From assembly GCF_001194135.2 (NCBI RefSeq), contig NC_068992.1, positions 35,417,819 to 35,454,240 of the forward strand: 36,422 nucleotides of DNA, in the 5' to 3' direction. Positions within the stretch are counted from its first letter, which is position 1. The number at the start of each line of letters is the position of its first letter. This document shows positions 4,066-28,850 of this stretch, one piece after another. A model generated the notes under the pieces. The model worked only from the letters and a program-made list of their open reading frames with translations, was not told the origin of the DNA and did not search any database. Origin of the DNA: Octopus bimaculoides. Taxonomy: Eukaryota. Made by a program: the position numbers and the translations under genes.

Positions 4066-4501
4066 ACAATCTTCTTCTTCTTCTTCTTCTTCTTCTTCTT
4101 CTTCTTTGTCTTCTCCGTTTTCTTTTTCTCCTATTCTTCCTATTTTCTTCCATCTTCTTCATATGTTTCTTTTTCTCCTTCGTCTTCTCCTTCTCTTCCG
4201 TCTGTCTTTTTCTTCGCCTTTCACTTCGTCTTTATCCCCTTTTCTTTTTCTTTTTCTTTTTCTTTTTCTTCTACGTCTTCTTCTACTTCTCCTTCATCCT
4301 CATCTTGGTCTTCTTCTTTTCTTCTTTTTTCTTATTCTTCTTGTTCATTTTTCTTTCATCTTCTTCTTCCCCTCTACTTCACATTCTTCTTTTCTTCTTC
4401 TTCATCTTCTTTTCTCTTTATTCTTGTTCTTGTTCTTTTTTCTTTCTTCATCCTCTTCTTTATTTTCTTCGTCTTCCCCTCTTCTTCTTCTTCTTCTTCT
4501 T

Positions 4502-4532
<31 letters not shown>

Positions 4533-4925
4533 TTCTCCTTATTCTGGTTGTTGTTGTTCTTCTTCTTCTTTGTCTCCTTCTTGTTCTTCTTTGTTTTCTT
4601 AATCTTCCCCTCCTTCTCCTTCTTCTTCTTCATCATTTTCTCCGTCTTCTCCACCTCCTTCTTCTTCGTCTTCTTTTCTTCTACTTCTTTGTCTTCCCCT
4701 TTCCTCCCCCTTCTTATTTTCTTCTAATTCTTTTCTTCTACTTCTTCTTCCCTGTCTTCTTCATCTTCCCCTACTTTTCCTTATTCATATTCTTTTCCTT
4801 CTTGTATTTCTTCTTCTCCTTTTCCTGTTCCTCCTTCTCCTTCCTCTTCCTTTCCTTCGTGTTCTCCTTGTTCTTTTTTTCTTTTCCTTCGTCTTCTTCG
4901 TCTTCATTTTCTTCTTTTATCCTTG
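4066..4925. repeat. ~860-bp (CTT)n-based polypyrimidine low-complexity tract
   Basis: Almost entirely C/T on the + strand, with perfect (CTT)n cores near 4070-4105 and 4478-4530. It accounts for the 304-aa and 227-aa L/F/S-rich ORFs. Confidence 0.95.
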
Positions 4926-6502: not shown

Positions 6503-7169
6503 ATACACACACAATTGGTGTGCATCTTAAAATCAACATCGATGATATAATTGAATGTGAATTATGAAACACGCGAAGTAAGCATTTTTTTTTCCTCCCG
6601 TTTCTTGATTTTAATTATTGTTATTATTTAATCCACAAGAGGCATTCCTAGATTTTCTGGAGCGTAGTCATTTTAATTTGCATACTAAATCTATCTGCCA
6701 CCCGATCGCCCAGGGGAGTGTTTACACTGGATTCTGTTTGATTCTTGGAATCGTTCTCTCCACTTGCATATATGGGGAAGTGCATTTTTCTGCCAGTGTT
6801 GAAGCGCGATGTGATGAGTCTGTTTGTGTCACATGTTTTTCCTATCCCATTCAGTAAAAAAGCACAGATGGATAAAATAAGAAATAAAGTGGATGATGTA
6901 GGCTTATTTTCCGTTGGTGTTTTCATAACAATTGTCCGATACGTATTTCGAACGCATTACATGAATATTTTTGAAGATATATATATATGCTGCGACTTAT
7001 TCATTATTAGTACGATCTCTACAGGATGTATACTTATGGCATTTTTCGAAGAAGATCTTCCCTCCGTTATTAGTTTGAATTAGGCTCAGCAGCAGTAGTA
7101 GGTTTGGAAGCAGTGAACGATAACGCACATCGATGAGCTGTTTTTCACAACAATATATATGCTTATAAA

Positions 7170-7385
7170 GGCGGCGAGCTGGCATAAACGTGAGCACGTC
7201 GGACGAAATGCTTAGTGATATTTCGTCTGTCTTTACGGTCTATGTTCAAATTTCGACGCGGTCGACTTTGCCTTTCATGCTTTCGGGGTCGACAAATTAA
7301 GTACCAGTTGTTTTCAGGGGTCGATCTAATCGACTGGTCCCCTTCCCCAAAATTTCCGGCCTTGTAACTCGAGCAGAAAAGAATA
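7170..7385 (+). mobile_element. tRNA-derived SINE, octopus type, family A (diverged copy)
   Basis: GGCGGCGAGCTGGC head, B-box-like GTTCAAAT, body GGTCGACTTTGCCTTTCAT..TTTCGGGGTCGA..AAGTACCAGTT. Homologous to 12334-12565. Confidence 0.85.
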
Positions 7386-7987
7386 TATATGTATTATATA
7401 TACACATATTAGAAATGGAAACCAAAATAGTAAATTGAACAATTAGATAATTTAATCATTAAATGATAAATTCTATTCAATTTTATTTTTTTATGCAAAC
7501 AAATGACACATCTAGTAAATTACAGCTGTTTCAACACCAGTAATAAAAACAGGTTTTTCAAGAAAAATAAAATAACGTTTTAAATATGAGTTTTCATCAG
7601 ACAGTCATATCTTTTTGAATATTTTACGAAAAATAGCAATTGAAAATGTTTATAACTACTAACGCATTTCAAAAAAATAAAACGCTTTGTAAGAACGATC
7701 TTAATCCTAAATAAATGATCTAACTGAAATGTCGTAAATTCCTAAATTTAAATCTATTAGTATCTACTTCTATAAACTGATTTTGTTGCATAATNNNNNN
7801 NNNNNNNNNNNNNNNNNNNNNNNNNNNNNNNNNNNNNNNNNNNNNNNNNNNNNNNNNNNNNNNNNNNNNNNNNNNNNNNNNNNNNNNNNNNNNNNNNNNN
7901 NNNNNNNNNNNNNNNNNNNNNNNNNNNNNTATATATACACGTACATCCATCCATTTTTGTATCTATACATACACATACACGGACGTA

Positions 7988-10541: not shown

Positions 10542-10973
10542 NNNNNNNNNNNNNNNNNNNNNNNNNNNNNNNNNNNNNNNNNNNNNNNNNNNNNNNNNNN
10601 NNNNNNNNNNNNNNNNNNNNNNNNNNNNNNNNNNNNNNNNNNNNNNNNNNNNNNNNNNNNNNNNNNNNNNNNNNNNNNNNNNNNNNNNNNNNNNNNNNNN
10701 NNNNNNNNNNNNNNNNNNNNNNNNNNNNNNNNNNNNNNNNNNNNNNNNNNNNNNNNNNNNNNNNNNNNNNNNNNNNNNNNNNNNNNNNNNNNNNNNCGGG
10801 ACTTTTATCTAGTTTTGTGTCTCAGAGCTTTGTATTACTTATCTTCACGAACTATTAACAAATATTTGTGAATATACGGAGGAAATAGTTTCGTTTGAAA
10901 ATGTTGCAAAATTATTTTCATTGGAAAACTAGACAACATTTAGTGAACATTAACGTGCCAATTCAGACAGTTA

Positions 10974-12194
10974 TCAGGTCATCCCAAAAGTTCTGTCTGA
11001 ATTTTGAATAAAGAAAACAAGTGATCAAATGTTAAGTTTAATTGAAATTTAATCAGCAATGTACTTTCCCTGATTATCTGTGACTTCCTTCCATCTATTT
11101 ACAAGATTTTTAAACTCATCAATGTAAAACTCTTTTGGTTTCAAAGCGAAGAACTCTGAAATGTCAGTTTCGACCGCCTCCTTCGTTGCGAAAGTTATGT
11201 CCCCCAAATGTTTCTGTAAACTACAAAACAAATGGTTGTCTGAAGGAGCAAGGTCGTAAGAATAAGGTGGATGTGGAATTTTTTCGCATCCATGCTCTTC
11301 GATCTTCTACTCCTTTTCGATTCACTAAAGCGGGTCTCTTTTCTTCAAAGCTTGGTTCAAACGCTCTAATTTCTGACAGTAGACTTGAGCATTAATTGTT
11401 GCATTAGGTGGTAACATTTCAAAGTGAATTACTCCTTTGCAATCCCACCAGATAGAGAGAAGAACCTTTTTCCCATGAAGTTCCCTTCTCGGTTGTGGTT
11501 GAACTTTTTCTCTTTTACCAAGCCACTGTTTACGACGTTTAACATTTCGATAGAAGATCCAGTTTTCGTCACCAGTCACAAGTCTATCCAAAAAGGGTGA
11601 AATGAGTTTGCGAGAATGGACAGAAGAGCGGATGCCAATTCGGGATTTGCGGTTGCTTTCAGACAATTCATCAGACGCTCATTTTTCCAAGTTTAGGAAG
11701 CTTTCCATGTTGTCGAAGATGACGATGAACAGTTGTATGGTTTTAAATAAGCGTTATTGCCAATTCTTCAACTGATAATGCAGGATTTTCTTCAATGCAG
11801 GATTTTCATCAAACTCAACTGGATGTCCTGATCAATCTTCATCTGCAAGGCTGAAATCTCCATTTCTGAATTTTGCAAACCATCTTCTGCAAGTTCTTTC
11901 ATTCAGGCATTCTTTCCCATAAACTGAGTGTATGTTTCGAGTCGCTTCGGCTGCAGGAGTTTCCTACTTTGTACTCATAAAGCATTAAGTGCCTCAAATG
12001 CTATTTGGATACTTCCATGTTAGAAAGGGTTTTAATCAAAAAAATATTAAATCCATTATTCTGTAAAATAATATTTAAGTAGTTTAAATGTACACAAATG
12101 CACAAAAAATAATTTTTAATTCCATTAGACATTCTAAAATACTATTAAATTTCTTAAAAAGGTAAAATGGGCCAGAACTTATGGGATGAACTGA
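10974..12194 (-). mobile_element. Near-full-length mariner DNA transposon
   Basis: Terminal inverted repeats TCAGGTCATCCCAAAAGTTCTG and TCAGTTCATCCCATAAGTTCTG (reverse complement of right end), a TA dinucleotide on each side (10972-10973, 12195-12196), length 1221 bp, internal transposase relic. Confidence 0.95.
11049..12018 (-). pseudogene. Mariner transposase pseudogene
   Basis: MEVSK*HLRHLMLYEY..AAEATRNIHSVYG..RRWFAKFRNGDFSL (HTH), FLDRLVTGDENW (first catalytic D), LLSIWWDCKGVIHFE, PHPPYSYDLAPSDNHLF (third D), ..NQGKYIAD*. Contains stops, frameshifts, a ~17-bp tandem duplication near 11774-11807, and lacks the HDNARPH segment. Confidence 0.93.
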
Positions 12195-12333
12195 TATTCC
12201 CTTCCACTTCATAGTTGTTGGAACGATACGTTATCGTCTGTATTTGAGTCATATACATTGTAATATTTATCTTTTCATAAAATAATCTATTCTTAGTAAA
12301 ACGTTAGACACACTACTCTACACACACTAAAAA

Positions 12334-12565
12334 GGCGACGAGCTGGCAGAAACGTTAGCACTCCGGGCGAAATGCTTAGCGGTATTTCGTTTGCCGCTAC
12401 GTTCTGAGTTCAAATTCCGCCGAGGTCGACTTTGCCTTTCATCCTTTCGGGGTCGATTAAATAAGTACCAGTTACGCACTCGGGTCGATATAATCGACTT
12501 AATCCGTTTGTCTGTCCTTGTTTGTCCCCTCTGTGTGTAGCCCCTTGTGGGTAGTAAAGAAATAA
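12334..12565 (+). mobile_element. tRNA-derived SINE, family A, apparently full length, with candidate target-site duplication
   Basis: GGCGACGAGCTGGCAGAAACGTTAGCA..GAGTTCAAATTCCGCCGAGGTCGACTTTGCC..GTAGTAAAGAAATA. The 13-mer ACTACTCTACACA occurs on both sides (12312-12324 and 12567-12579). Confidence 0.9.
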
Positions 12566-12944
12566 TACTACTCTACACAAAGTTCTTTTTACAAATAACA
12601 GAATAACACTGGACGACATGCATTTGCTCCATTTAGTTAGTATATCAACAACATCCAGGTAAATCTTTAAACTTACATGTAAAACACAGGCATTGCTACT
12701 CAAATAAAAATAGATATCGATGAATTACTTAATATTTTAAAGAATACGTGAAACCGATAATGTCAGTCTGTAAAATTGGGTACTAGTCGAAGGTAACTAT
12801 TCTGTTATGACACTAATGCATTTCCATATTTCTCAGATGCCCGAACCATTGAATTTGAGCAGTGAAAAACATCAAGTTTACGCATCGGGTAAAAACATTA
12901 ATTGGACATCATAGCAACTAGCTTACTGACAATCTCCTGATGTA

Positions 12945-13440
12945 CATATTGAAATTCCTCTTGAAGGCTCTGGATTTGGCAAGGCAATTCACCAATACAA
13001 GCATCCTCCATGTCAGAATCATGAACACCAGAAAGTTAATCCTGGTTCACAACGATCCTTCCTTCTGCGTGAAGAAAGAAAGCGATCCAATGTGTTCGAC
13101 ATATCTATAGGGTGCTACAACGGGTCTGAAATCGCCGACCTCATCGGGTTGCATATCTTGGATACCATCAAGAAACGCACATACTTACACAGGTCACCCC
13201 TTTACAGGGACGACAGCCTGGAAATATCTAAACCAGTTGAAGGGCCACGCCATGAACAACTTTAGGAAGGACCTCATGAAAATAGCCAAAGCAATTGGTC
13301 TGTCCCTAATAGTTACCACCAACTAGACCACGGTCGACTTCCTAGACGTGACTGAAAACAGGCAAGTATTAACCACACAAGAAGCCCAACGAGGAAACTG
13401 TGTACATTGACAGAAGCTTCAAGCAGCCCCACCCCATACT
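12945..13440 (+). mobile_element. Penelope-like element reverse transcriptase fragment
   Basis: Manual translation: LLKALDLARQFT..; FDISIGCYNGSEIADLIGLHIL..LYRDDSL; FRKDLMKIAKAIGLSL..TN*TTVDFLDVT; KKPNEETVYIDRSFKQPP. These match the PLE RT pattern MGSYDGAE..LYRDDGL..VDFLDVT..KPN..YI..SNHPP. Confidence 0.85.

Positions 13441-17701: not shown

Positions 17702-17766
<65 letters not shown>
17702..17766. repeat. (TA)n microsatellite
   Basis: Perfect run separating the LINE fragment from the Helitron-side sequence. Confidence 0.97.
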
Positions 17767-17769
<3 letters not shown>

Positions 17770-17919
17770 CAGGCTTGGAGGTAATAATGTTGCTGGCTGG
17801 TGCGATTTTGTAGTTTGATGGTATGCCGAGAGAGATCCAGCAGGCCTCTAACTGGTCCCCCGATTTTAAAGGTGTAATGTGGATGTGTAATGAAGGAGCA
17901 GCTGGTGTGGTGGTTTTCC

Positions 17920-18640
17920 TCACAGTACTTCACGGTAGACAATATTTTGTGTGTATGTCACACCACGTTTTTGGCCTTGTCTGTTATCCCAATTGAGTAT
18001 CATGACTCTTACTTTGATATTGTTCATAGCTCGTGCTCTTGAAAATGCGACATAATTGGCCATGAGGAAATACCGGTTGAGGCAAATGTATTCCAACTGT
18101 TTCAAATGTTTGCCCTTGAGCCTTATTAATTGTCATTGAATATGCAAGTCGAAGTGAAAACTGAAATCTGTTTAGTGTAAATGGAATATTTGCATCACTT
18201 GGGCTAAGTTAAATTCTGGGAATTAGAACTGTACGACCTCTGTTGGAGTCCGTTACCAATGATGCCGCTACATAACATTCATAAAGCCTTTGCACTTTCA
18301 TGCGAGTTCCATTACATAATCCTTGACTGATCGAAAGATTTCTTAGCAGCATTATAATAGCCCCTACTTTTAAGTTGAAGCGATGAGGAGGCGTACCGGA
18401 TGGTGTGAGTGAGTTTATGAACTCAAATGGATAGTTCTGAACCTCATCTTCATTATTGAAGGACACTGAAACTGCGCTTAAGTACGTTTTAAGTACGTCT
18501 GGTATAATATTAAGAACTTTGTCATTTATTCCAAGACAGTCGGAATTTTTAGGAGATATAATTACTCGTTTTACCATTTCTTCTGGCGTGCAGTTGTTGA
18601 AAATTTCTGGATTAAAATGTACAAATTGACATGCAAAAGA
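17920..18640 (-). mobile_element. Helitron Rep/helicase fragment (PIF1-like helicase C-terminus)
   Basis: ISPKN..INDKVL..YPFEFINSLTPSGTPPHRFNLKVGAIIMLLRNLSISQGLCNGTR..TVLIPRI*LSPSD..RFQFSLRLAYSMTINKAQGQT (motif V), HGQL(fs)VAFSRAR (motif VI), TQNIVYREVL*. One in-frame stop and one frameshift. Confidence 0.93.
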
Positions 18641-19298
18641 ACGAAATAATAAATGGATTTATAAAAGAAAGTTTGGTAATTGCGTTTATTTCCACCACGC
18701 GATACTTATTGCAAACATGTTTAACTGACCTACACACACAAATACATTCATATATATATATGTATATGTCTTTAGATGTAGCTGTAATTCAAAAGGGCCA
18801 GCTTTTTCATATTCTATGTGAGGTTGAATCTCCTTCAGAACTAGTTAATGTTATGCATTTCTGTGGAGTGCTCAGCCATTTGTGAGTTAATTTTATCCTT
18901 GTGAGGTAATGAAAAGTGAAATTGACAGCCAATATTTGCTGTGTCTATGTATTTATGTATGAACTTTATGTATCTCCTGTATCTTTCACTTTATCTCTTT
19001 CTTTTTCACTTCCTTTGTGTCCCTCTTCTCTCTCGCTTTTAATTTTACAATGTATGTATGTACCTATGTATCTACTTCTCTTGCGATGTGATAAACATTT
19101 AAAAACACAGAACGAACGCCGTCACCACTCACTGTCTCTTTCACTCTCTTTCTCTCTCACTCTTTCACATTCTCTCTTACTCTCTCTCTCTCTCTCTCAC
19201 TTCCTCTCTGTCCTCCTCTCTCTCTCTCTCGCTTTGCCACTTGTTTGAATTAAGCGTGACGTGCACAACAGGTAGTACGAAAACAAAAAGTTATCGTA

Positions 19299-19516: not shown

Positions 19517-20805
19517 GAGAGAGTGGGGAAGCATAGCTTGGAAAATAATAGATAATTCCCCAAATTGTTTATTTTATAACAACCTGACATAAATATAATT
19601 TTAACCCAAGTTTATAGAGGTATAAAAAGACAAGTTATTCAATATGTTCAGGTTTATTGTTCACCACAGCCTTCACACGCCCTCTGAAGGCATCACAACA
19701 CTTCATGATGAAGTACTCAGACTTGTTGTCGCGCTCTTCCTTCAGAATTAGTTTAGATTATCAACATTTGGATGCGAAGTTCTGTTGATAGATTGCTCTA
19801 ATTTCTAATTTTCTCCATGTCGTATAGTCCAAGGGGTTCGAGTGTGGGCTGCAAGAAGGCCAGAGGTTGGCAGGTCAAATGTTGGCAAAGTTGTCTTCGC
19901 AGAGTTTCTGCATTTACATCACGGTATGAGTAGGAGCACCATCTTGGGTCCACACATAATTACCATTGGGATAGTCAAACTTCAGCCAAGGCAAAACCTT
20001 ATACCGCAGAACTCTATAATAAACTTCAGCCCCCACCTTTTCCCCAGACTTGGAAAAATGGAGAGGCATCTGTTTTCCGTTAGACGCCATGATCAGAGTA
20101 CCATGACTTGAGCTGGAGTTAGGGTGCTTGGTCCTAAAGACGCCCTTTACTTCAGAAGGTGAGTTAGCAATGTATCGATCATTGCGACGGTTTAAAACAG
20201 CATCGATGTTAAAGATTTTTTCAACTGAAAAGATTTTGACGGTTTCTCCATTGTGCTTCAGGTATCACAACAATTTTTTGATCCGTTCATGCCTTCTGGC
20301 TTTCATTGCATGGATCAATAGGTGTCTCGGGATCTTCACATATGACCCCAACAATAAATCAGTGTGTACAGCATTTCTGATGGCCTTTGGATCAACTTTC
20401 ATGTCTATGGATAGTTTTCTAGGATGTTGTTGGGTCTTTCGAAATTTTGGCTTTGAGAGATTTAAGAAATGCATTATCCCGTTCTTTAATTTATGCCTCA
20501 TTTCCTTGCTTTCACTCGATGCTTCCCATATCCAGCATTCGGTTTTTAACGCTGTAGACAGTGCTCACAGAGACCCGGACAGTCTCAGCAATACGTTTAA
20601 TTGCAAACCCTGCACGAAGCAAATCTGCAATGCGTTGTCTCTTTGCTCCTTGAGTGGACATGCAAAATCGTATAACTCGAACTTCTGTTTAAATTAACTC
20701 TATATACCTCCACCCTGAAATAGAAAACAATATTTTTGTCTTTACGTTCAGGAATATATGAAAATAAGGCTTCCAAAATATTCGAAGTTTTGCTTCCCCT
20801 CCCAG
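19517..20805 (-). mobile_element. DD37D (maT-family) Tc1/mariner DNA transposon, ~1.29 kb, degenerate
   Basis: Imperfect TIRs (..GTGGGGAAGCATAGCTTGGAAAAT and, as reverse complement, CTGGGAGGGGAAGCAAAACTTCGAATAT) next to TA runs, enclosing a transposase relic. The left boundary is ambiguous by a few bases. Confidence 0.85.
19635..20661 (-). pseudogene. maT/DD37D transposase pseudogene
   Basis: MSTQGAKRQRIADLLRAG..(HTH); KIFSVEKIFNIDAVLNRRNDRY (FSDEK with D changed to V); WTQDGAPTHT..LWPSCSPHSNPLDY with exactly 37 codons between the QDG and PLD aspartates (counted by hand); ..AFRGRVKAVVNNKPEHIE*. Multiple stops and frameshifts. Confidence 0.9.
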
Positions 20806-20982: not shown

Positions 20983-22979
20983 GTATGTATCTATGTATAT
21001 ATGTATGCATGTGTGTATATATGTATGGATGTATGTATGTATATAGTATTGCTCTGAAACGTTATGTCTGTTATTAAATAGAATTATTATCTACGTCATT
21101 AATTACTCTGAATTGCATATCAGCATAAAAGGAACGCGCTCTTTTTCGTTGACTAAATAGATCTTTTGTATTCATCATTCTCGCATAGCCCACAGCCATA
21201 TAGCTCACCTTCCCTGACGCCCTTTGATTTAAAAAATGTTTAGATGTATATTTCATATTTATTTTTTATTCATTCATAAATTCAATGTAGACTAATCTTG
21301 TCAATTCACGTTACTCCAAACTACTATGAAGTGCAAAGACTTGCAGAGGCTTAATCGTTTACTTTCCTTATAGATTCTCACCAGTTAATTTTGTACTCTG
21401 CATGTATTCCTGCTCAACTTATACTCCATACATCAATGAAATAATACTCTCTACAAAACCAATATTTATCCAAAAATAAGTACTTTCGTTAAAGGCTGAA
21501 TCAGTTAATCCAAAATCGCAAAACATGCCAATGACATATCGGAAGTAATACGATATTTTGTAAACCTTACTAGCTAACGAATTCTCTTTCAACATTATTT
21601 GCAGACAAACAGTTTTATCCTTTCCAAAATCTTTCGATCAAATAGTAAAATTTTGCTATTCACCTCCCCAACAATAGAATGGGGTTGTCTGAAGCAGTTC
21701 ACAGCTAGATCCATCAAAATAGGAAATAATCTCTTGTATGAAAAAGGGAATGTGATAAACCTAACCCGATGGATTCAGTAAAGTATTGATTCAAAATTCA
21801 AAGAAAGTTACAGAATATAAAAGCACTGAAAGAACATTTGATGGGTAGAAAACTAAAACGTTTGGTATAAAATCCAAGAACAAACCAGTCTGAATCTGTC
21901 ATTGTATAATAATATTTCGTCCATCCACCTACTGGGGCAAAATTGGTAAAATATGTTAACCCCATTCCCCTACTATGAAACTGAGCCTCCCACACAAATG
22001 CATATGGGAATAGCCTTGAGCCTTGAGGTAGGTGAAGCGCGACTAAACTTGGAAAATATATACGTATGCAGTTGAATGTATGCGTATATCTATTTAGGTG
22101 GATTTATACATATTTGTATGTATATCTGTGTCTGTGTGTATGAATATCAATATGTATTTATAAAGACTTAAGTGCGTGTGTATCGAAGTAGGCTTGCAAG
22201 CATATTTTGAATGTGTATGCACACCGACGATTGCCTCACAACATGCGACAATGATTGTATTAGTGTGCACTCTGTACGAGTGTACACATGATGTAAGATC
22301 ATCTCATGACAACGCCCGGGTATACAAAAACAGAAAAATGGGCCTTGGTATGTAGACAATCATGCATATATATTTGTACATATATCTCATTTATTATATG
22401 TTATTTTCAGATTTTATTGCTAGAATGTATTATCACTTATGGTGTTCCTTGTGTACGTCGTAATACTAACATACTTAAACTGATGCAGACGGTCTGCATA
22501 TGAATAGAATATCTGATCTGTGCATATTAGATATATGTGTCAAAATTTGAATCGGTAATAGTATCCAGTTGCTCAACTTTTTATTAATTAAGCACACTTT
22601 AAGCACCCAAGGTACTACCTGTGTACGAATTACATGCCTTAATTCTCTACCTTTGAAGCTCATTTTCAATTTTCTGTGTTTAAATGTCAATCTCTGTAAC
22701 AACGATCACCCTTATGGTATTATACTTTCACATCTTCGCGAAATTTATAGTAATTAATTGAATGATTATATTCGGCACGACACACTGTTTATAGCTGTTC
22801 GTCTCAAATCAAAGTGATTGACTGATAATGCATACTTTCCTGTGCGTTTAAAGTTAATAAATTTCGTCGAATCGACCTTGTTATACAAGTTCAATAGTTA
22901 GTTTATAAGCTACAATAAACCTATTATTAGTTTTGGTTTCATTGACACATGACAATACATATATGACTCTGTGTGTGTA

Positions 22980-23345
22980 ATTAATTAAAAACAACGAAGA
23001 AAAAAGACAAGAAAAATCAACCCGAGGACGTAACATATGCAAAGTATTAATAAGACGCTCAGAGAAGGAAAGAGTGGTTGTTTTACGTTAAGTGTAGCTC
23101 TTCGTCGGAAACAGGAGACATAGGAAAGTCCAAAAGAAGAAGAAGATGCAGAAATCATATAGTTACATTTTTGAAATGACCAGAAGCAGATGGACAAAGA
23201 GAAAGTGATTTCTGGGGAGGAGAGTTTGATTAATTAAAAACAACGGAGAAAAAAGACAAGAAAAATCAACCCGAGGACGTAACATATGCAAAGTATTAAT
23301 AAGACGCTCAGAGAAGGAAAGAGTGGTTGTTTTACGTTAAGTGTA
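22980..23345 (-). repeat. 117-bp direct repeat pair (22980-23096 and 23229-23345), period 249 bp; probable PLE pseudo-LTR remnant
   Basis: The copies differ at one position (GAAGA vs GGAGA). They lie downstream, on the minus strand, of the PLE ORF at 24608-25770. The pseudo-LTR call is inference. Confidence 0.8.
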
Positions 23346-23568
23346 TCTGTGTGTATGTATGTGTGTGTTGGTGTGGGTGTTTTTGCATGTGTGCGTAGAT
23401 GGGATGGTCAGTAGTGAGTCGGTGCTCCGCTAGAAGGGTGTCCGAGAGGTAGTCTGAAGGGTGTGTGAATGGGTGGGTATGGATGTGTGTGTGTGCTGGC
23501 CTATTTAAGTACACGGAGTGGGGAATGTGTGTGAGTGTGAACAGGTGTATGAGTGCGCATGTGTCTCA

Positions 23569-25913: not shown

Positions 25914-26224
25914 NNNNNNNNNNNNNNNNNNNNNNNNNNNNNNNNNNNNNNNNNNNNNNNNNNNNNNNNNNNNNNNNNNNNNNNNNNNNNNNNNNNNNNN
26001 NATATGTATATATCGACTTTAAATGGAGCTCAAAACTTATCCATTGAAAATACTTTATTATAATATTAATAATAATGAAAAAGACCTATGAAAATTTCGA
26101 TGCAATATCCAGAATGATTCATACATATAAGATATTATAAAATACTATATTCTTTTGCCAAAATTTTTGGTATATAAAAAAATATATATAAACATATATA
26201 TGTATATATATATATATGTGTGTG

Positions 26225-26420
26225 TGTGTCTCTGTGTTTGTACCCCCACCATCACTTTCAACTGATGTTGCTGTGTTTACGTCCCCGTAACTAAGCCGTT
26301 TGGCAAAACTAACTGATGAAAGAAGTACTAGGCTTAAAAAGACTAAATCCTGCGGTCGATTTCTTCGACGAAAGGTGGTGCTGCAGCATGGCCTCAGTCA
26401 TATGACGGAAACAAGTGCAA
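26225..26420 (+). mobile_element. 3' half of an octopus-type SINE, family C
   Basis: GTGTTTGTACCCCCACC..GTGTTTACGTCCCCGTAACT..GTACTAGGCTT..GGTCGATTT..GGTGCTGCAGCATGGCC.CAGTCA..GAAACAAGT after a TA/TG microsatellite. The family link to 29558-29678 is recalled, not demonstrable inside the window. Confidence 0.8.
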
Positions 26421-26555: not shown

Positions 26556-26592
<37 letters not shown>

Positions 26593-26598
<6 letters not shown>

Positions 26599-27282
26599 CC
26601 TTCAAACACTGAGATTTGAAGTTAGATGTCACTACTGTTCATATCATCTATGGATAAATTCAAAGTTTGATGATATCACCAGTAGTGGCATGGGTGGAAC
26701 GCAATTATAATAGCTTTAAGCAGCTATGAACTATAAATTTGCACGAAGTGTAATGATGCTTAATAAGCATCTACCTGCTAGAAATAAGAGCTAAGTCTTA
26801 AAATAATCCACCGTAGCGCACCAATATAACAGAGAAAAACAGTATGCCAGGAAAACAGAGAATTAAAATATTTAACAGCACAAATAAAAATATTATGCAA
26901 TTAGGGATATCCACAAACCAGGTTTCGGCTTTTGGGTATTTAACCCTAAGCCTCGTCAGTGTGGACCACCAGTTTAAATCCGTGACTGTTCATGTTAATC
27001 TCTGACTGTGCAACTGGTTTTGTTTTGCGCCAAAAACAGAGCACTTGGTGCATAAAAATGTATAAATGAAACATTCAAACACTGTGATTTGAAGTTAGAT
27101 GTCACTACTGTTCATATCATCTGTGGATAAATTCAAAGTTTGATATCACCAGTAGTGGCATGGGTGGAACGCAGTTATAATGGCTTTAAAGAGCTATGAA
27201 GCGTAATGCACGAAGCGTAATGATGCTTAATGAGCATCTACCTGCTAGAAATAAGAGCTAAGTCTTAAAATAATCCACCGTA
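26593..27282 (-). mobile_element. Retrozyme-like element: ~220-bp direct repeats (26593-26815, 27066-27282) around a 250-bp spacer holding a hammerhead motif
   Basis: The repeats differ by about 12 substitutions and two 3-bp indels; period 473 bp. (TA)n lies directly on both outer sides. The repeat structure is seen directly; the retrozyme call is inference. Confidence 0.7.
26910..26965 (-). ncRNA. Minimal type I hammerhead ribozyme motif
   Basis: Minus strand reads TCCACA-CTGACGA-GGCTT A GGGT TAAAT ACCC AA AAGCC-GAAA-CCTGG-TT-TGTGGA. It has both conserved core boxes, a perfect 6-bp stem I, an extended stem II, a near-palindromic stem III (ACC-T-GGT) and a GUU triplet. Predicted cut between 26916 and 26915. 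Confidence 0.85.
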
Positions 27283-27424
27283 TATATATATACAAACATA
27301 TATATTGCATAATATATCAACAATATTAATAATGATTACTATGAAGTTGCATAGCACTACCTTTATTTCTTTAATTTATATACAACTTTACACTGACCCT
27401 TGGCATTTACAAATATATATATGC

Positions 27425-28499: not shown

Positions 28500-28850
28500 T
28501 ATTTCGTGAAAAACCTATTCTTCCAATTTGGCAGACGAAATGAGAAGAACTTTAAAATTTTTGTCGGCGCCTTGTGTGAGAGGCTGGGTAAAGGCACAAT
28601 AAAACCGTTCATCCATTCTCCAGAAGTGTCCTGTTGGTGTCTCACGTTTCCAATCCTGCACAACGCAGCATGGCCCGGCAGCATGTCGGTTTTCTATGTC
28701 ATCCATGGCTGAACTGTATAATGCAAAATTGTCATACAAAAAAGCAAACTGCTGTTGTGACACACAGCCATTTGAGTTTGACTGCATGATCACTATCGAA
28801 AGCTACGCTCGCCACCTGCCTTTAGTCATCCCTTGTATTCCCTCCGTCGT
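28500..28850 (-). mobile_element. Possible heavily decayed RTE-like LINE RT N-terminal fragment
   Basis: Frameshifted pieces AMDDIENRHAAGP, GEWMNGFIVPLP and NFKVLLISSAKL loosely follow the KAAGPD..W..G.I.PLPKKGD..NYRGI.L.S..AK order. Weak. Confidence 0.4.

What the first reader, a model, noticed from the sequence alone, without database searches (positions are those of the whole stretch)
26910..26965. Intact minimal type I hammerhead ribozyme on the minus strand
Seen: TCCACA / CUGACGA / GGCUU-A-GGGU-UAAAU-ACCC-AA-AAGCC / GAAA / CC-U-GG / UU / UGUGGA. Both catalytic boxes are perfect, stem I has 6 Watson-Crick pairs and stem II is a bulged 9-bp helix. Stem III forms only 2 bp within one molecule, but ACC-U-GGU is self-complementary around one U. 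Established: minimal type I hammerheads with short palindromic stem III occur in Penelope-like elements and metazoan retrozymes and cleave as dimers. Inference: a self-cleaving RNA cutting after GUU (26916/26915). GUU is a weaker triplet than GUC or GUA, so activity may be low.
Basis: partly seen in the sequence, partly recalled or inferred. Interest (0 to 1): 0.88.

Follow-up and report, generated by a model that had tools for sequence, protein, structure and literature searches.

The report
Hammerhead ribozyme in octopus retroelement relic
The sequence is an intact-looking type I hammerhead ribozyme motif inside a small non-coding retroelement (1.47 tandem copies of a ~470-nt unit, inserted in a TA microsatellite) in an octopus genome, which is an ordinary new example of the ribozymes already known from Penelope-like elements and animal retrozymes.

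Summary
Minus strand 26965->26910 reads stem I / CUGACGA / bulged 9-bp stem II / GAAA / ACC-U-GGU / U17 / stem I. It is the only such motif in the window. A relaxed hammerhead descriptor is expected 4e-4 times per window by chance, and a descriptor as strict as the observed motif gave 0 hits in 2.34 Gb of random sequence.

Rfam does not call it: Hammerhead_3 scores 18.4 bits and RAGATH-1-hammerhead 16.1 bits, both far below gathering.

The context points to a retroelement. The motif lies in the single-copy part of a partial tandem (26595-27282) of a ~470-nt, 36% GC, ORF-less unit with (TA)n on both sides. The genome is an octopus genome, most likely O. bimaculoides, and octopus genomes carry Penelope-like elements. 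The virtual 472-nt monomer is strongly structured (z = -4.25). Two copies are predicted to dimerise through the AAACC-U-GGUUU palindrome.

My reading is an old, probably dead insertion of a non-autonomous Penelope-like/retrozyme element. With one ribozyme, a 2-bp helix III and a GUU site, efficient cleavage at this locus is unlikely.

No second family copy could be retrieved, so conservation and covariation remain untested. It is a new member of a known kind, of low to moderate interest.

The parts
26910..26965 (-). Complete type I hammerhead motif, with helix I open, and helices II and III closed.
   Evidence: Read directly. It is the only hit of the structural descriptor in the window. The strict descriptor gave 0 hits in 2.34 Gb of random sequence.
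26960..26965 (-). Helix I, 5' strand (UCCACA). G26966 extends it by a G.U pair.
26953..26959 (-). Catalytic box CUGACGA (C3-A9).
26927..26952 (-). Helix II: GGCUU/AAGCC (5 bp, G10.1-C11.1), internal loop A/AA, GGGU/ACCC (4 bp), loop UAAAU.
   Evidence: It forms in the MFE folds.
26917..26926 (-). G12 A13 A14 followed by the helix III segment A15.1-CC-U-GG-U16.1. In cis it forms 2 bp and a CUG triloop. It is the centre of the 11-nt palindrome AAACC-U-GGUUU.
   Evidence: An intermolecular helix is predicted by RNAcofold.
26915..26916 (-). Predicted scissile bond, between U17 (26916) and U1.1 (26915). The cleavage triplet is GUU.
   Evidence: Position follows from the hammerhead numbering applied. 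Cleavage itself was not tested.
26910..26915 (-). Helix I, 3' strand (UGUGGA).
26595..27282 (-). The whole element: 1.47 head-to-tail copies of a ~470-nt non-coding unit (36% GC).
   Evidence: Direct repeats D13-D15 at spacing 467-473. Self-BLAST. Alignment A1. The longest ATG/GTG/TTG ORF is 53 aa and the longest stop-to-stop frame is 63 aa.
27067..27282 (-). Upstream (5') repeated arm R, which reads as a 5'-truncated partial unit.
   Evidence: It differs from the other arm by 12 substitutions in 217 positions and 2 indels.
26816..27066 (-). Single-copy part of the unit, which holds the hammerhead.
26595..26815 (-). Downstream (3') repeated arm R. It contains an internal hairpin (26626-26691) and ends in the stem-loop CTTCAAA-TCTCAGTG-TTTGAAG, immediately before the (TA)n.
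26559..26594 (.). (AT)18 microsatellite abutting the 3' end of the element; presumed target sequence.
   Evidence: TRF row; sequence.
27283..27296 (.). Short (TA)n run abutting the 5' end of the element; presumed other half of the target microsatellite.
   Evidence: Sequence.

Best explanation
This is a relic insertion of a small non-autonomous retroelement of the Penelope-like / non-LTR-retrozyme kind, in an octopus genome. It carries one copy of the element's type I hammerhead ribozyme.

Proposed life cycle of the family (inferred from the named literature, not shown here):
1. Loci with two or more units are transcribed on the strand that is 'minus' here.
2. Helix III is only 2 bp in cis, so two ribozyme copies pair through the palindrome ACC-U-GGU into a double hammerhead.
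3. Each active site cuts after U17, giving 5'-OH and 2',3'-cyclic-phosphate ends.
4. The ~470-nt unit is released and joined by a host RNA ligase into a structured circle, or is used unprocessed.
5. A Penelope-like RT/GIY-YIG endonuclease nicks AT-rich DNA and copies more than one unit length. This leaves a partial tandem, as seen here: 1.47 units in a (TA)n microsatellite.

At this locus there is a single ribozyme, a GUU site and about 3% decay per arm. It can at most nick a read-through transcript once, and only with a partner RNA or protein assistance. I consider it non-functional for the host.

Shown here: the motif, its improbability by chance, the partial-tandem anatomy, the (TA)n flanks, the lack of ORFs, the strong predicted structure, the predicted dimer, and the octopus origin.

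Inferred: transcription, cleavage, circularisation, and mobilisation by a PLE.
For: - The motif is exact and is unique in the window.
- Chance expectation is 4e-4 per window for a relaxed descriptor. A descriptor as strict as the observed motif gave 0 hits in 2.34 Gb.
- Two of the three best Rfam matches to a 96-nt slice are hammerhead models.
- The element is a partial tandem of a ~470-nt unit with one ribozyme per unit, 36% GC and no ORF.
- Both ends abut (TA)n. PLEs form partial tandems and prefer microsatellites such as (TA)n, which hides target-site duplications (PMC8557442). A Poseidon PLE cuts AT-rich DNA and starts reverse transcription internally next to a stem-loop (PMC11167929).
- Features listed for PLE and metazoan hammerheads are present: long helix II, G10.1-C11.1, and palindromic 15.2-16.2 plus loop 3 (PMC4209133).
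- The virtual 472-nt circle folds at -121.6 kcal/mol, against -96.2 +/- 6.0 for shuffles (z = -4.25). Hammerhead stems I and II are part of that global fold.
- The predicted dimer is 7.5 kcal/mol more stable than two monomers, with an intermolecular palindrome helix.
- The genome is an octopus genome. Octopus genomes carry old and recent Penelope-like families (PMC13282606).
- Retrozyme units of 51-972 bp and 'monomer derivatives' are common (bioRxiv 10.64898/2026.07.22.740005).
Against: - No second copy of the unit was found. Searches covered the rest of the window, 124 kb of O. bimaculoides and O. sinensis DNA, and pattern scans of the viral, metagenome and prokaryote collections.
- Multi-copy status, conservation and covariation are therefore unproven.
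- No PLE RT/EN ORF is in the window.
- Rfam scores are far below gathering.
- The unpaired nucleotide between A9 and 10.1 that is typical of PLE min-hammerheads is absent.
- The insertion ends do not coincide with the ribozyme cut site. A processed linear monomer was therefore not the template.
- GUU is a rare and slow natural site (my own knowledge of the NUH rule).
Confidence: 0.68

Rival explanations
1. Live retrozyme locus. The real locus is a longer tandem array that the gap-rich short-read assembly collapsed to about 1.5 units. It is transcribed, the ribozymes act as dimers, and ~470-nt circular RNAs accumulate in octopus tissues.
For: - The assembly has 10 N gaps, and repeats are poorly resolved.
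- The monomer is strongly structured, the dimer is favoured, and all core positions are intact.
- Non-LTR retrozymes are highly expressed as circRNAs in other molluscs (PMC7229834).
Against: - The two arms differ by 5.5% plus 2 indels. That argues for two distinct old copies rather than a collapsed young array.
- Both ends run into unique (TA)n flanks with no gap nearby.
- The site is GUU.
Confidence: 0.12
2. A genuine hammerhead-bearing repeat fragment, but the 1.47-copy arrangement arose by a local DNA-level tandem duplication (slippage or unequal exchange between microsatellites) or by mis-assembly. It would not reflect more-than-unit reverse transcription.
For: - The region is full of microsatellites, which promote slippage and mis-assembly.
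- Another nearby 249-nt-spaced duplication exists at 22975-23348.
- No target-site duplication can be defined.
Against: - The duplicated block starts and ends exactly at the (TA)n borders. This is what is expected if the whole block was inserted as one piece.
- Partial tandems are the typical PLE/retrozyme signature (PMC8557442, PMC11167929).
Confidence: 0.12
3. Chance occurrence of the hammerhead consensus in AT-rich repetitive DNA, with no ribozyme ancestry.
For: - Rfam models stay far below threshold.
- The relaxed descriptor is expected about 22 times by chance in a 2-Gb genome.
- Sequence-only patterns do hit by chance in large collections (L001, L002).
- No homologue was available to show conservation.
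Against: - The strict descriptor gave 0 hits in 2.34 Gb. My analytic estimate is below 0.1 per 2-Gb genome, even before counting the second 4-bp segment of helix II.
- The motif sits in exactly the kind of element that is known to carry such ribozymes.
Confidence: 0.05
4. Host-domesticated ribozyme that processes a host transcript, as with intronic or 3'-UTR hammerheads of vertebrates.
For: The core is intact despite an old insertion.
Against: - At about 3% decay per copy, a 13-nt core stays intact about two times in three by chance (inference).
- The only gene model found in the window is a chimera of two transposon ORFs.
- No host exon was recognised near the element.
Confidence: 0.03

Closest known systems
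Hammerheads of Penelope-like elements (min-HHR and 'small palindromic helix III' variants; Cervera & de la Pena 2014, PMC4209133)
   Same: - Type I topology and a perfect core.
- Long helix II (here 5+4 bp) and G10.1-C11.1.
- Palindromic 15.2-16.2 and loop 3, so a dimer is needed.
- The carrier is arranged as a partial tandem and inserted in a (TA)n microsatellite.
   Different: - There is no unpaired nucleotide between A9 and 10.1.
- Helix I is a full 6-7 bp rather than 4-5 bp.
- Helix II has an internal loop.
- No RT/GIY-YIG ORF lies between the repeats; the whole unit is only ~470 nt.
- The site is GUU.
Metazoan non-LTR retrozymes (Cervera & de la Pena 2020, PMC7229834; Li et al. 2026 preprint, 10.64898/2026.07.22.740005)
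   Same: - A short (~470 nt), AT-rich, ORF-less unit with one type I hammerhead per unit, arranged head to tail.
- Strongly structured predicted monomer.
- Host genome contains PLEs.
- Single-ribozyme 'monomer derivatives' are described for these elements.
   Different: - Only 1.47 units and one ribozyme are present here, so no unit can be excised.
- The unit is at the upper end of the 170-400 nt range first described, though within the 51-972 bp range of the preprint.
- Family copy number and circRNA expression are unknown.
- I found no description from cephalopods in the searchable literature.
Satellite hammerheads of newts and salamanders (satellite 2), acting as double hammerheads
   Same: Weak helix III capped by a palindromic loop, with efficient cleavage only as a dimer (PMC7229834).
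   Different: - The amphibian motifs have a 4-bp helix II and conserved loop 1-loop 2 contacts, and they use GUC.
- Those loop contacts are not recognisable here.

Membership tests
Hammerhead ribozyme, type I | Conserved core: C3 U4 G5 A6 N7 G8 A9, G12 A13 A14, the A15.1-U16.1 pair, and H17 not G. | tested here: met
   All positions are present. H17 is U. This is the only such site in the window.
Hammerhead ribozyme, type I | Three helices around the core, with helix I open-ended and helices II and III closed. | tested here: inconclusive
   Helix I (6 WC pairs + G.U) and helix II (5+4 bp) form in the MFE folds. Helix III has only 2 bp and a triloop in cis. A full helix III (6 bp + U.U) forms only between two copies.
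Hammerhead ribozyme, type I | Score at or above the gathering threshold of an Rfam hammerhead covariance model. | tested here: not met
   No hit at gathering. The best scores are Hammerhead_3 at 18.4 against 48.5 bits, in a permuted and non-functional register, and RAGATH-1-hammerhead at 16.1 against 56.3 bits, in the type I register.
Hammerhead ribozyme, type I | Compensatory changes in helices I and II, and core conservation, among homologous copies. | not testable with these tools
   No homologous copy could be retrieved. No eukaryotic genome can be searched by DNA here.
Hammerhead ribozyme, type I | Site-specific self-cleavage that gives 2',3'-cyclic phosphate and 5'-OH ends. | not testable with these tools
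   This needs in vitro transcription or RNA end mapping.
PLE-type hammerhead (Cervera & de la Pena 2014) | Palindromic 15.2-16.2 positions and loop 3, with a minimal helix III. | tested here: met
   A-CC-U-GG-U. AAACCUGGUUU is self-complementary apart from its central U.
PLE-type hammerhead (Cervera & de la Pena 2014) | G10.1-C11.1 pair and a larger than usual helix II. | tested here: met
   GGCUU...AAGCC closes on G-C, and the helix has 9 bp in all.
PLE-type hammerhead (Cervera & de la Pena 2014) | An extra unpaired nucleotide between A9 and 10.1. | tested here: not met
   A9 is followed directly by G10.1.
PLE-type hammerhead (Cervera & de la Pena 2014) | Location in the pseudo-LTR of an element that encodes RT and a GIY-YIG endonuclease. 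| tested here: not met
   Only 251 nt lie between the repeated arms. No RT or EN ORF was recognised in the window. This is compatible with a non-autonomous derivative only.
Non-LTR retrozyme | Head-to-tail repeats of a short unit, each with a type I hammerhead. | tested here: inconclusive
   The arrangement is head to tail with a period of ~470 nt, but there are only 1.47 units and one ribozyme.
Non-LTR retrozyme | Low GC content (<45-50%) and no coding capacity. | tested here: met
   GC is 36%. The longest ORF is 53 aa.
Non-LTR retrozyme | A dispersed multi-copy family in the genome. | tested here: inconclusive
   No other copy was found in 33 kb of resolved window sequence or in 124 kb of octopus DNA. 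The sample is far too small to decide.
Non-LTR retrozyme | Expression as unit-length linear and circular RNA. | not testable with these tools
   No RNA data are available.

The most novel reading that the evidence does not exclude
The unit belongs to a still-active cephalopod retrozyme family. The locus would be a collapsed tandem array, or would have live tandem relatives elsewhere. Its ~470-nt RNAs would be cut by double hammerheads at a natural GUU site and would accumulate as circular RNAs in octopus tissues. I found no description of retrozyme circRNAs from cephalopods.
Probability: 0.12. Interest if true: 0.45.

Novelty: new member of a known kind. Interest (0 to 1): 0.25.

Why it matters
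If the family is confirmed, it adds cephalopods to the animals known to carry hammerhead-bearing Penelope-like or retrozyme elements. It would also give a concrete unit (472 nt, GUU site, bulged 9-bp helix II) to look for in octopus total-RNA data. It does not change what is known about hammerheads or their carriers. As a single old locus it has no evident consequence for the host.

Tried and rejected
1. Rfam at gathering over the whole window found nothing. E-value mode gave only sub-threshold hammerhead hits. The Hammerhead_3 alignment needs H17 = G and a 2-bp helix I, so I rejected the type III reading.
2. I looked for family copies outside the window.
   - A pattern scan of IMG/VR gave one chance hit in a GC-rich phage coding region.
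   - A scan of JGI metagenomes gave one chance hit and two unrelated genuine microbial hammerheads.
   - A scan of GTDB genomes gave none.
3. I used translated ORFs of the element as a handle on Logan/NCBI contigs. There were no exact records and no homologues of the 53-aa antisense ORF.
4. I sampled the same genome through neighbouring transposon proteins. This yielded 124 kb of O. bimaculoides and O. sinensis DNA, with no copy of the unit and no hammerhead-like motif. It does establish the octopus origin.
5. A literature search for the exact core and stem strings found nothing, and no supplement is held for PMC4209133.
6. A tRNA/SINE-head origin of the unit is not supported: ARAGORN found nothing and there were no other Rfam hits.
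7. A nearby PLE ORF was not found. The recognisable ORFs in the window are mariner, Pif1/Helitron and a Tc1-like remnant.
8. The CRISPR-DR39, DicF and HIV-1 SL4 hits are weak chance matches.

Full report
**The observation.** On the minus strand the window reads TCCACA (26965-26960), CTGACGA (26959-26953), GGCTT-A-GGGT-TAAAT-ACCC-AA-AAGCC (26952-26927), GAAA (26926-26923), CC-T-GG (26922-26918), TT (26917-26916) and TGTGGA (26915-26910). In hammerhead numbering these are helix I 5' strand, C3-A9, helix II with G10.1-C11.1, G12-A15.1, the rest of helix III, U16.1 with U17, and helix I 3' strand. The order is that of a type I motif. A 76-nt slice folds into helix I (6 Watson-Crick pairs, one G.U, a 2x2 internal loop, two more G-C pairs) and helix II (-23.1 kcal/mol, z = -2.15). 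In cis, helix III can form only A15.1-U16.1 and C15.2-G16.2 around a CUG triloop.

**Chance.**
- The sequence pattern CTGANGA-N(8-38)-CGAAAC occurs once in the window, against 0.06 expected.
- A structural descriptor of my own finds only this site on either strand. It required a 5-bp helix I, a 4-bp helix II, both boxes, A15.1-U16.1 plus one more pair, and H17 not G. It found none in 300 Markov windows.
- In 2.34 Gb of random sequence of the window's composition it hit 13 times. That is 4e-4 per window, or about 22 per 2-Gb genome.
- A version as strict as the observed motif hit 0 times. It required a 6-bp helix I, a 5-bp helix II closed by G10.1-C11.1, and a palindromic 15.1-16.1 segment.
- The descriptor recovers two genuine microbial hammerheads and rejects two chance pattern matches met during the searches.

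Chance is therefore a poor explanation even genome-wide.

**Rfam.**
- Nothing in the window reaches a gathering score.
- With permissive settings the best match is Hammerhead_3 at 18.4 bits against a gathering score of 48.5. Its alignment is permuted, needs H17 = G and a 2-bp helix I, and is not a workable ribozyme.
- Two of the three best matches among 4,227 families being hammerheads is suggestive, but it is not a call.
- Helix III reduced to a few nucleotides and a helix II with an 18-nt insertion cost most of the score.

**Surroundings.** The motif is not isolated.
- Direct repeats with a spacing of 467-473 nt, a self-BLAST and an alignment show an element at 26595-27282 with 1.47 head-to-tail copies of a ~470-nt unit.
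- On the minus strand it consists of arm R (27282->27067), a single-copy part with the hammerhead (27066->26816), and arm R again (26815->26595).
- The arms differ by 12 substitutions in 217 positions (K2P 0.058) and two indels.
- The unit is 36% GC. It has no start-to-stop ORF above 53 aa, and the longest stop-free frame is 63 aa. It has no tRNA-like head and no other copy in the window.
- Both ends abut TA microsatellite: (AT)18 at 26559-26594 and a short (TA)n run at 27283-27296. No target-site duplication can be defined.
- The 3' end lies just after a 7-bp stem-loop.

**Host.** The window is animal DNA dense in microsatellites, with 10 N gaps.
- It holds remnants of a mariner element (Pfam Transposase_1) and of a Pif1/Helitron helicase.
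- Its interspersed repeats match 20-kb samples of the O. bimaculoides chromosomes at 75-90% identity.
- The best named protein hits are from O. bimaculoides and O. sinensis.
- P0018 is 100% identical to two window ORFs spliced together.
- The source is therefore an octopus, most likely O. bimaculoides.
- Octopus genomes carry Penelope-like elements. O. vulgaris had an expansion about 56 My ago and has 31 recently active Penelope-like families (PMC13282606).

**Mechanism.** Each piece of the anatomy matches what is described for Penelope-like elements and their non-autonomous derivatives.
- PLEs insert as partial tandems and favour microsatellites such as (TA)n, which masks target duplications (PMC8557442).
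- A purified Poseidon enzyme cuts AT-rich DNA and starts reverse transcription inside the RNA next to a stem-loop (PMC11167929).
- Their hammerheads have a long helix II, G10.1-C11.1 and a palindromic minimal helix III. They work poorly unless paired as dimers (PMC4209133).
- Animal non-LTR retrozymes are AT-rich, ORF-less tandem units with one type I hammerhead each. [quoted passage not shown]
- A 2026 preprint derives retrozymes from PLE pseudo-LTRs. It reports unit lengths of 51-972 bp and frequent single-ribozyme derivatives (10.64898/2026.07.22.740005).

Two computations fit this picture.
- The virtual 472-nt monomer, cut site to cut site, folds as a circle at -121.6 kcal/mol against -96.2 +/- 6.0 for shuffles (z = -4.25). 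Hammerhead helices I and II are part of that global fold.
- Two 66-nt copies are predicted to pair at -52.1 kcal/mol against 2 x -22.3. They do so through an intermolecular helix on the palindrome AAACC-U-GGUUU.

I therefore read the locus as an insertion made by more-than-unit reverse transcription of such an RNA. The ends of the insertion do not coincide with the ribozyme cut site. The template was therefore either a circle or an unprocessed multimer, not a processed linear monomer.

**State of this copy.**
- There is one ribozyme, so there is no partner in cis and no second cut to release a unit.
- Helix III has 2 bp.
- The triplet is GUU, which is cleavable but slow (my knowledge of the NUH rule).
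- The arms have drifted by about 3% each. On the calibration used for O. vulgaris repeats (JC 0.09 for about 25 My; PMC13282606) that suggests very roughly 8 My. This assumes the arms were identical at insertion.
- An intact 13-nt core after that much decay is expected about two times in three by chance, so it is not evidence of selection.
- I consider the copy a relic. A caveat is that a short-read assembly can collapse tandem arrays, so the true locus may be longer.

**What could not be done.** The decisive comparison with other copies failed for lack of a searchable eukaryotic genome.
- Pattern scans of viral, metagenomic and prokaryotic collections gave only chance hits and two unrelated microbial hammerheads.
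- ORF-based look-ups gave nothing.
- The 124 kb of octopus DNA reached through transposon proteins holds no copy and no hammerhead-like motif.
- The literature searches found no description of hammerheads or retrozymes in cephalopods, and no match to the motif's strings.

**Verdict.** It is a new member of a well-known kind.

Noticed in passing
window 18212-18600 (-) and 19917-20264 (-): A database protein (P0018, 229 aa) is 100% identical to these two ORFs joined. They are a Tc1-like transposase remnant and a Pif1/Helitron helicase remnant. It therefore looks like a chimeric, transposon-derived gene model predicted on this very sequence.
   Followed up: partly
window 10964-12197 (-): Frameshifted mariner transposase remnant (Pfam Transposase_1, 93 bits). 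It is 89% identical in DNA to a Logan contig (L005, SRR20902413) that carries an intact 342-aa transposase, and 74% identical to an O. bimaculoides copy (L006).
   Followed up: partly
window 17746-19178 (-): Helitron-type Pif1 helicase remnant (Pif1_2B_dom, 70 bits). It has many O. bimaculoides and O. sinensis paralogues at 60-84% protein identity.
   Followed up: partly
window 26193-26416; 12329-12565; 7168-7386: Short interspersed repeats. The first has three copies in a single 20-kb O. bimaculoides sample (L006). The other two have several copies in L006 and L007 at 75-90% identity. They are probably octopus SINEs. One lies about 180 nt from the hammerhead element.
   Followed up: no
window, whole: Microsatellite density is very high (68 TRF rows). 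There are 10 N gaps totalling 3,237 bases, nearly all abutting dinucleotide repeats. This is typical of a short-read scaffold, so tandem repeats may be collapsed.
   Followed up: no
window 22975-23099 and 23224-23348: A 125-nt direct repeat, 97% identical, at a spacing of 249 nt. It is another local tandem duplication of unknown origin.
   Followed up: no
L003:3139-3192 (+) and L004:624-676 (+): Two metagenomic contigs carry textbook type I hammerheads, with a GUC site and helix III CCCC-UUCG-GGGG. They share the stem II sequence GGCUU...AAGCC with the octopus motif by coincidence and are otherwise unrelated to it.
   Followed up: partly
window 12930-13262 (+) and 28518-28802 (-): Two high-complexity ORFs (111 and 95 aa) with no Pfam match. 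Neither could be assigned to a transposon or to a host exon.
   Followed up: no
window 4070-4916: An 850-nt imperfect (TCT)n tract with nested 20-, 32- and 56-nt periodicities. It gives long spurious Ser/Leu/Phe-rich ORFs.
   Followed up: no
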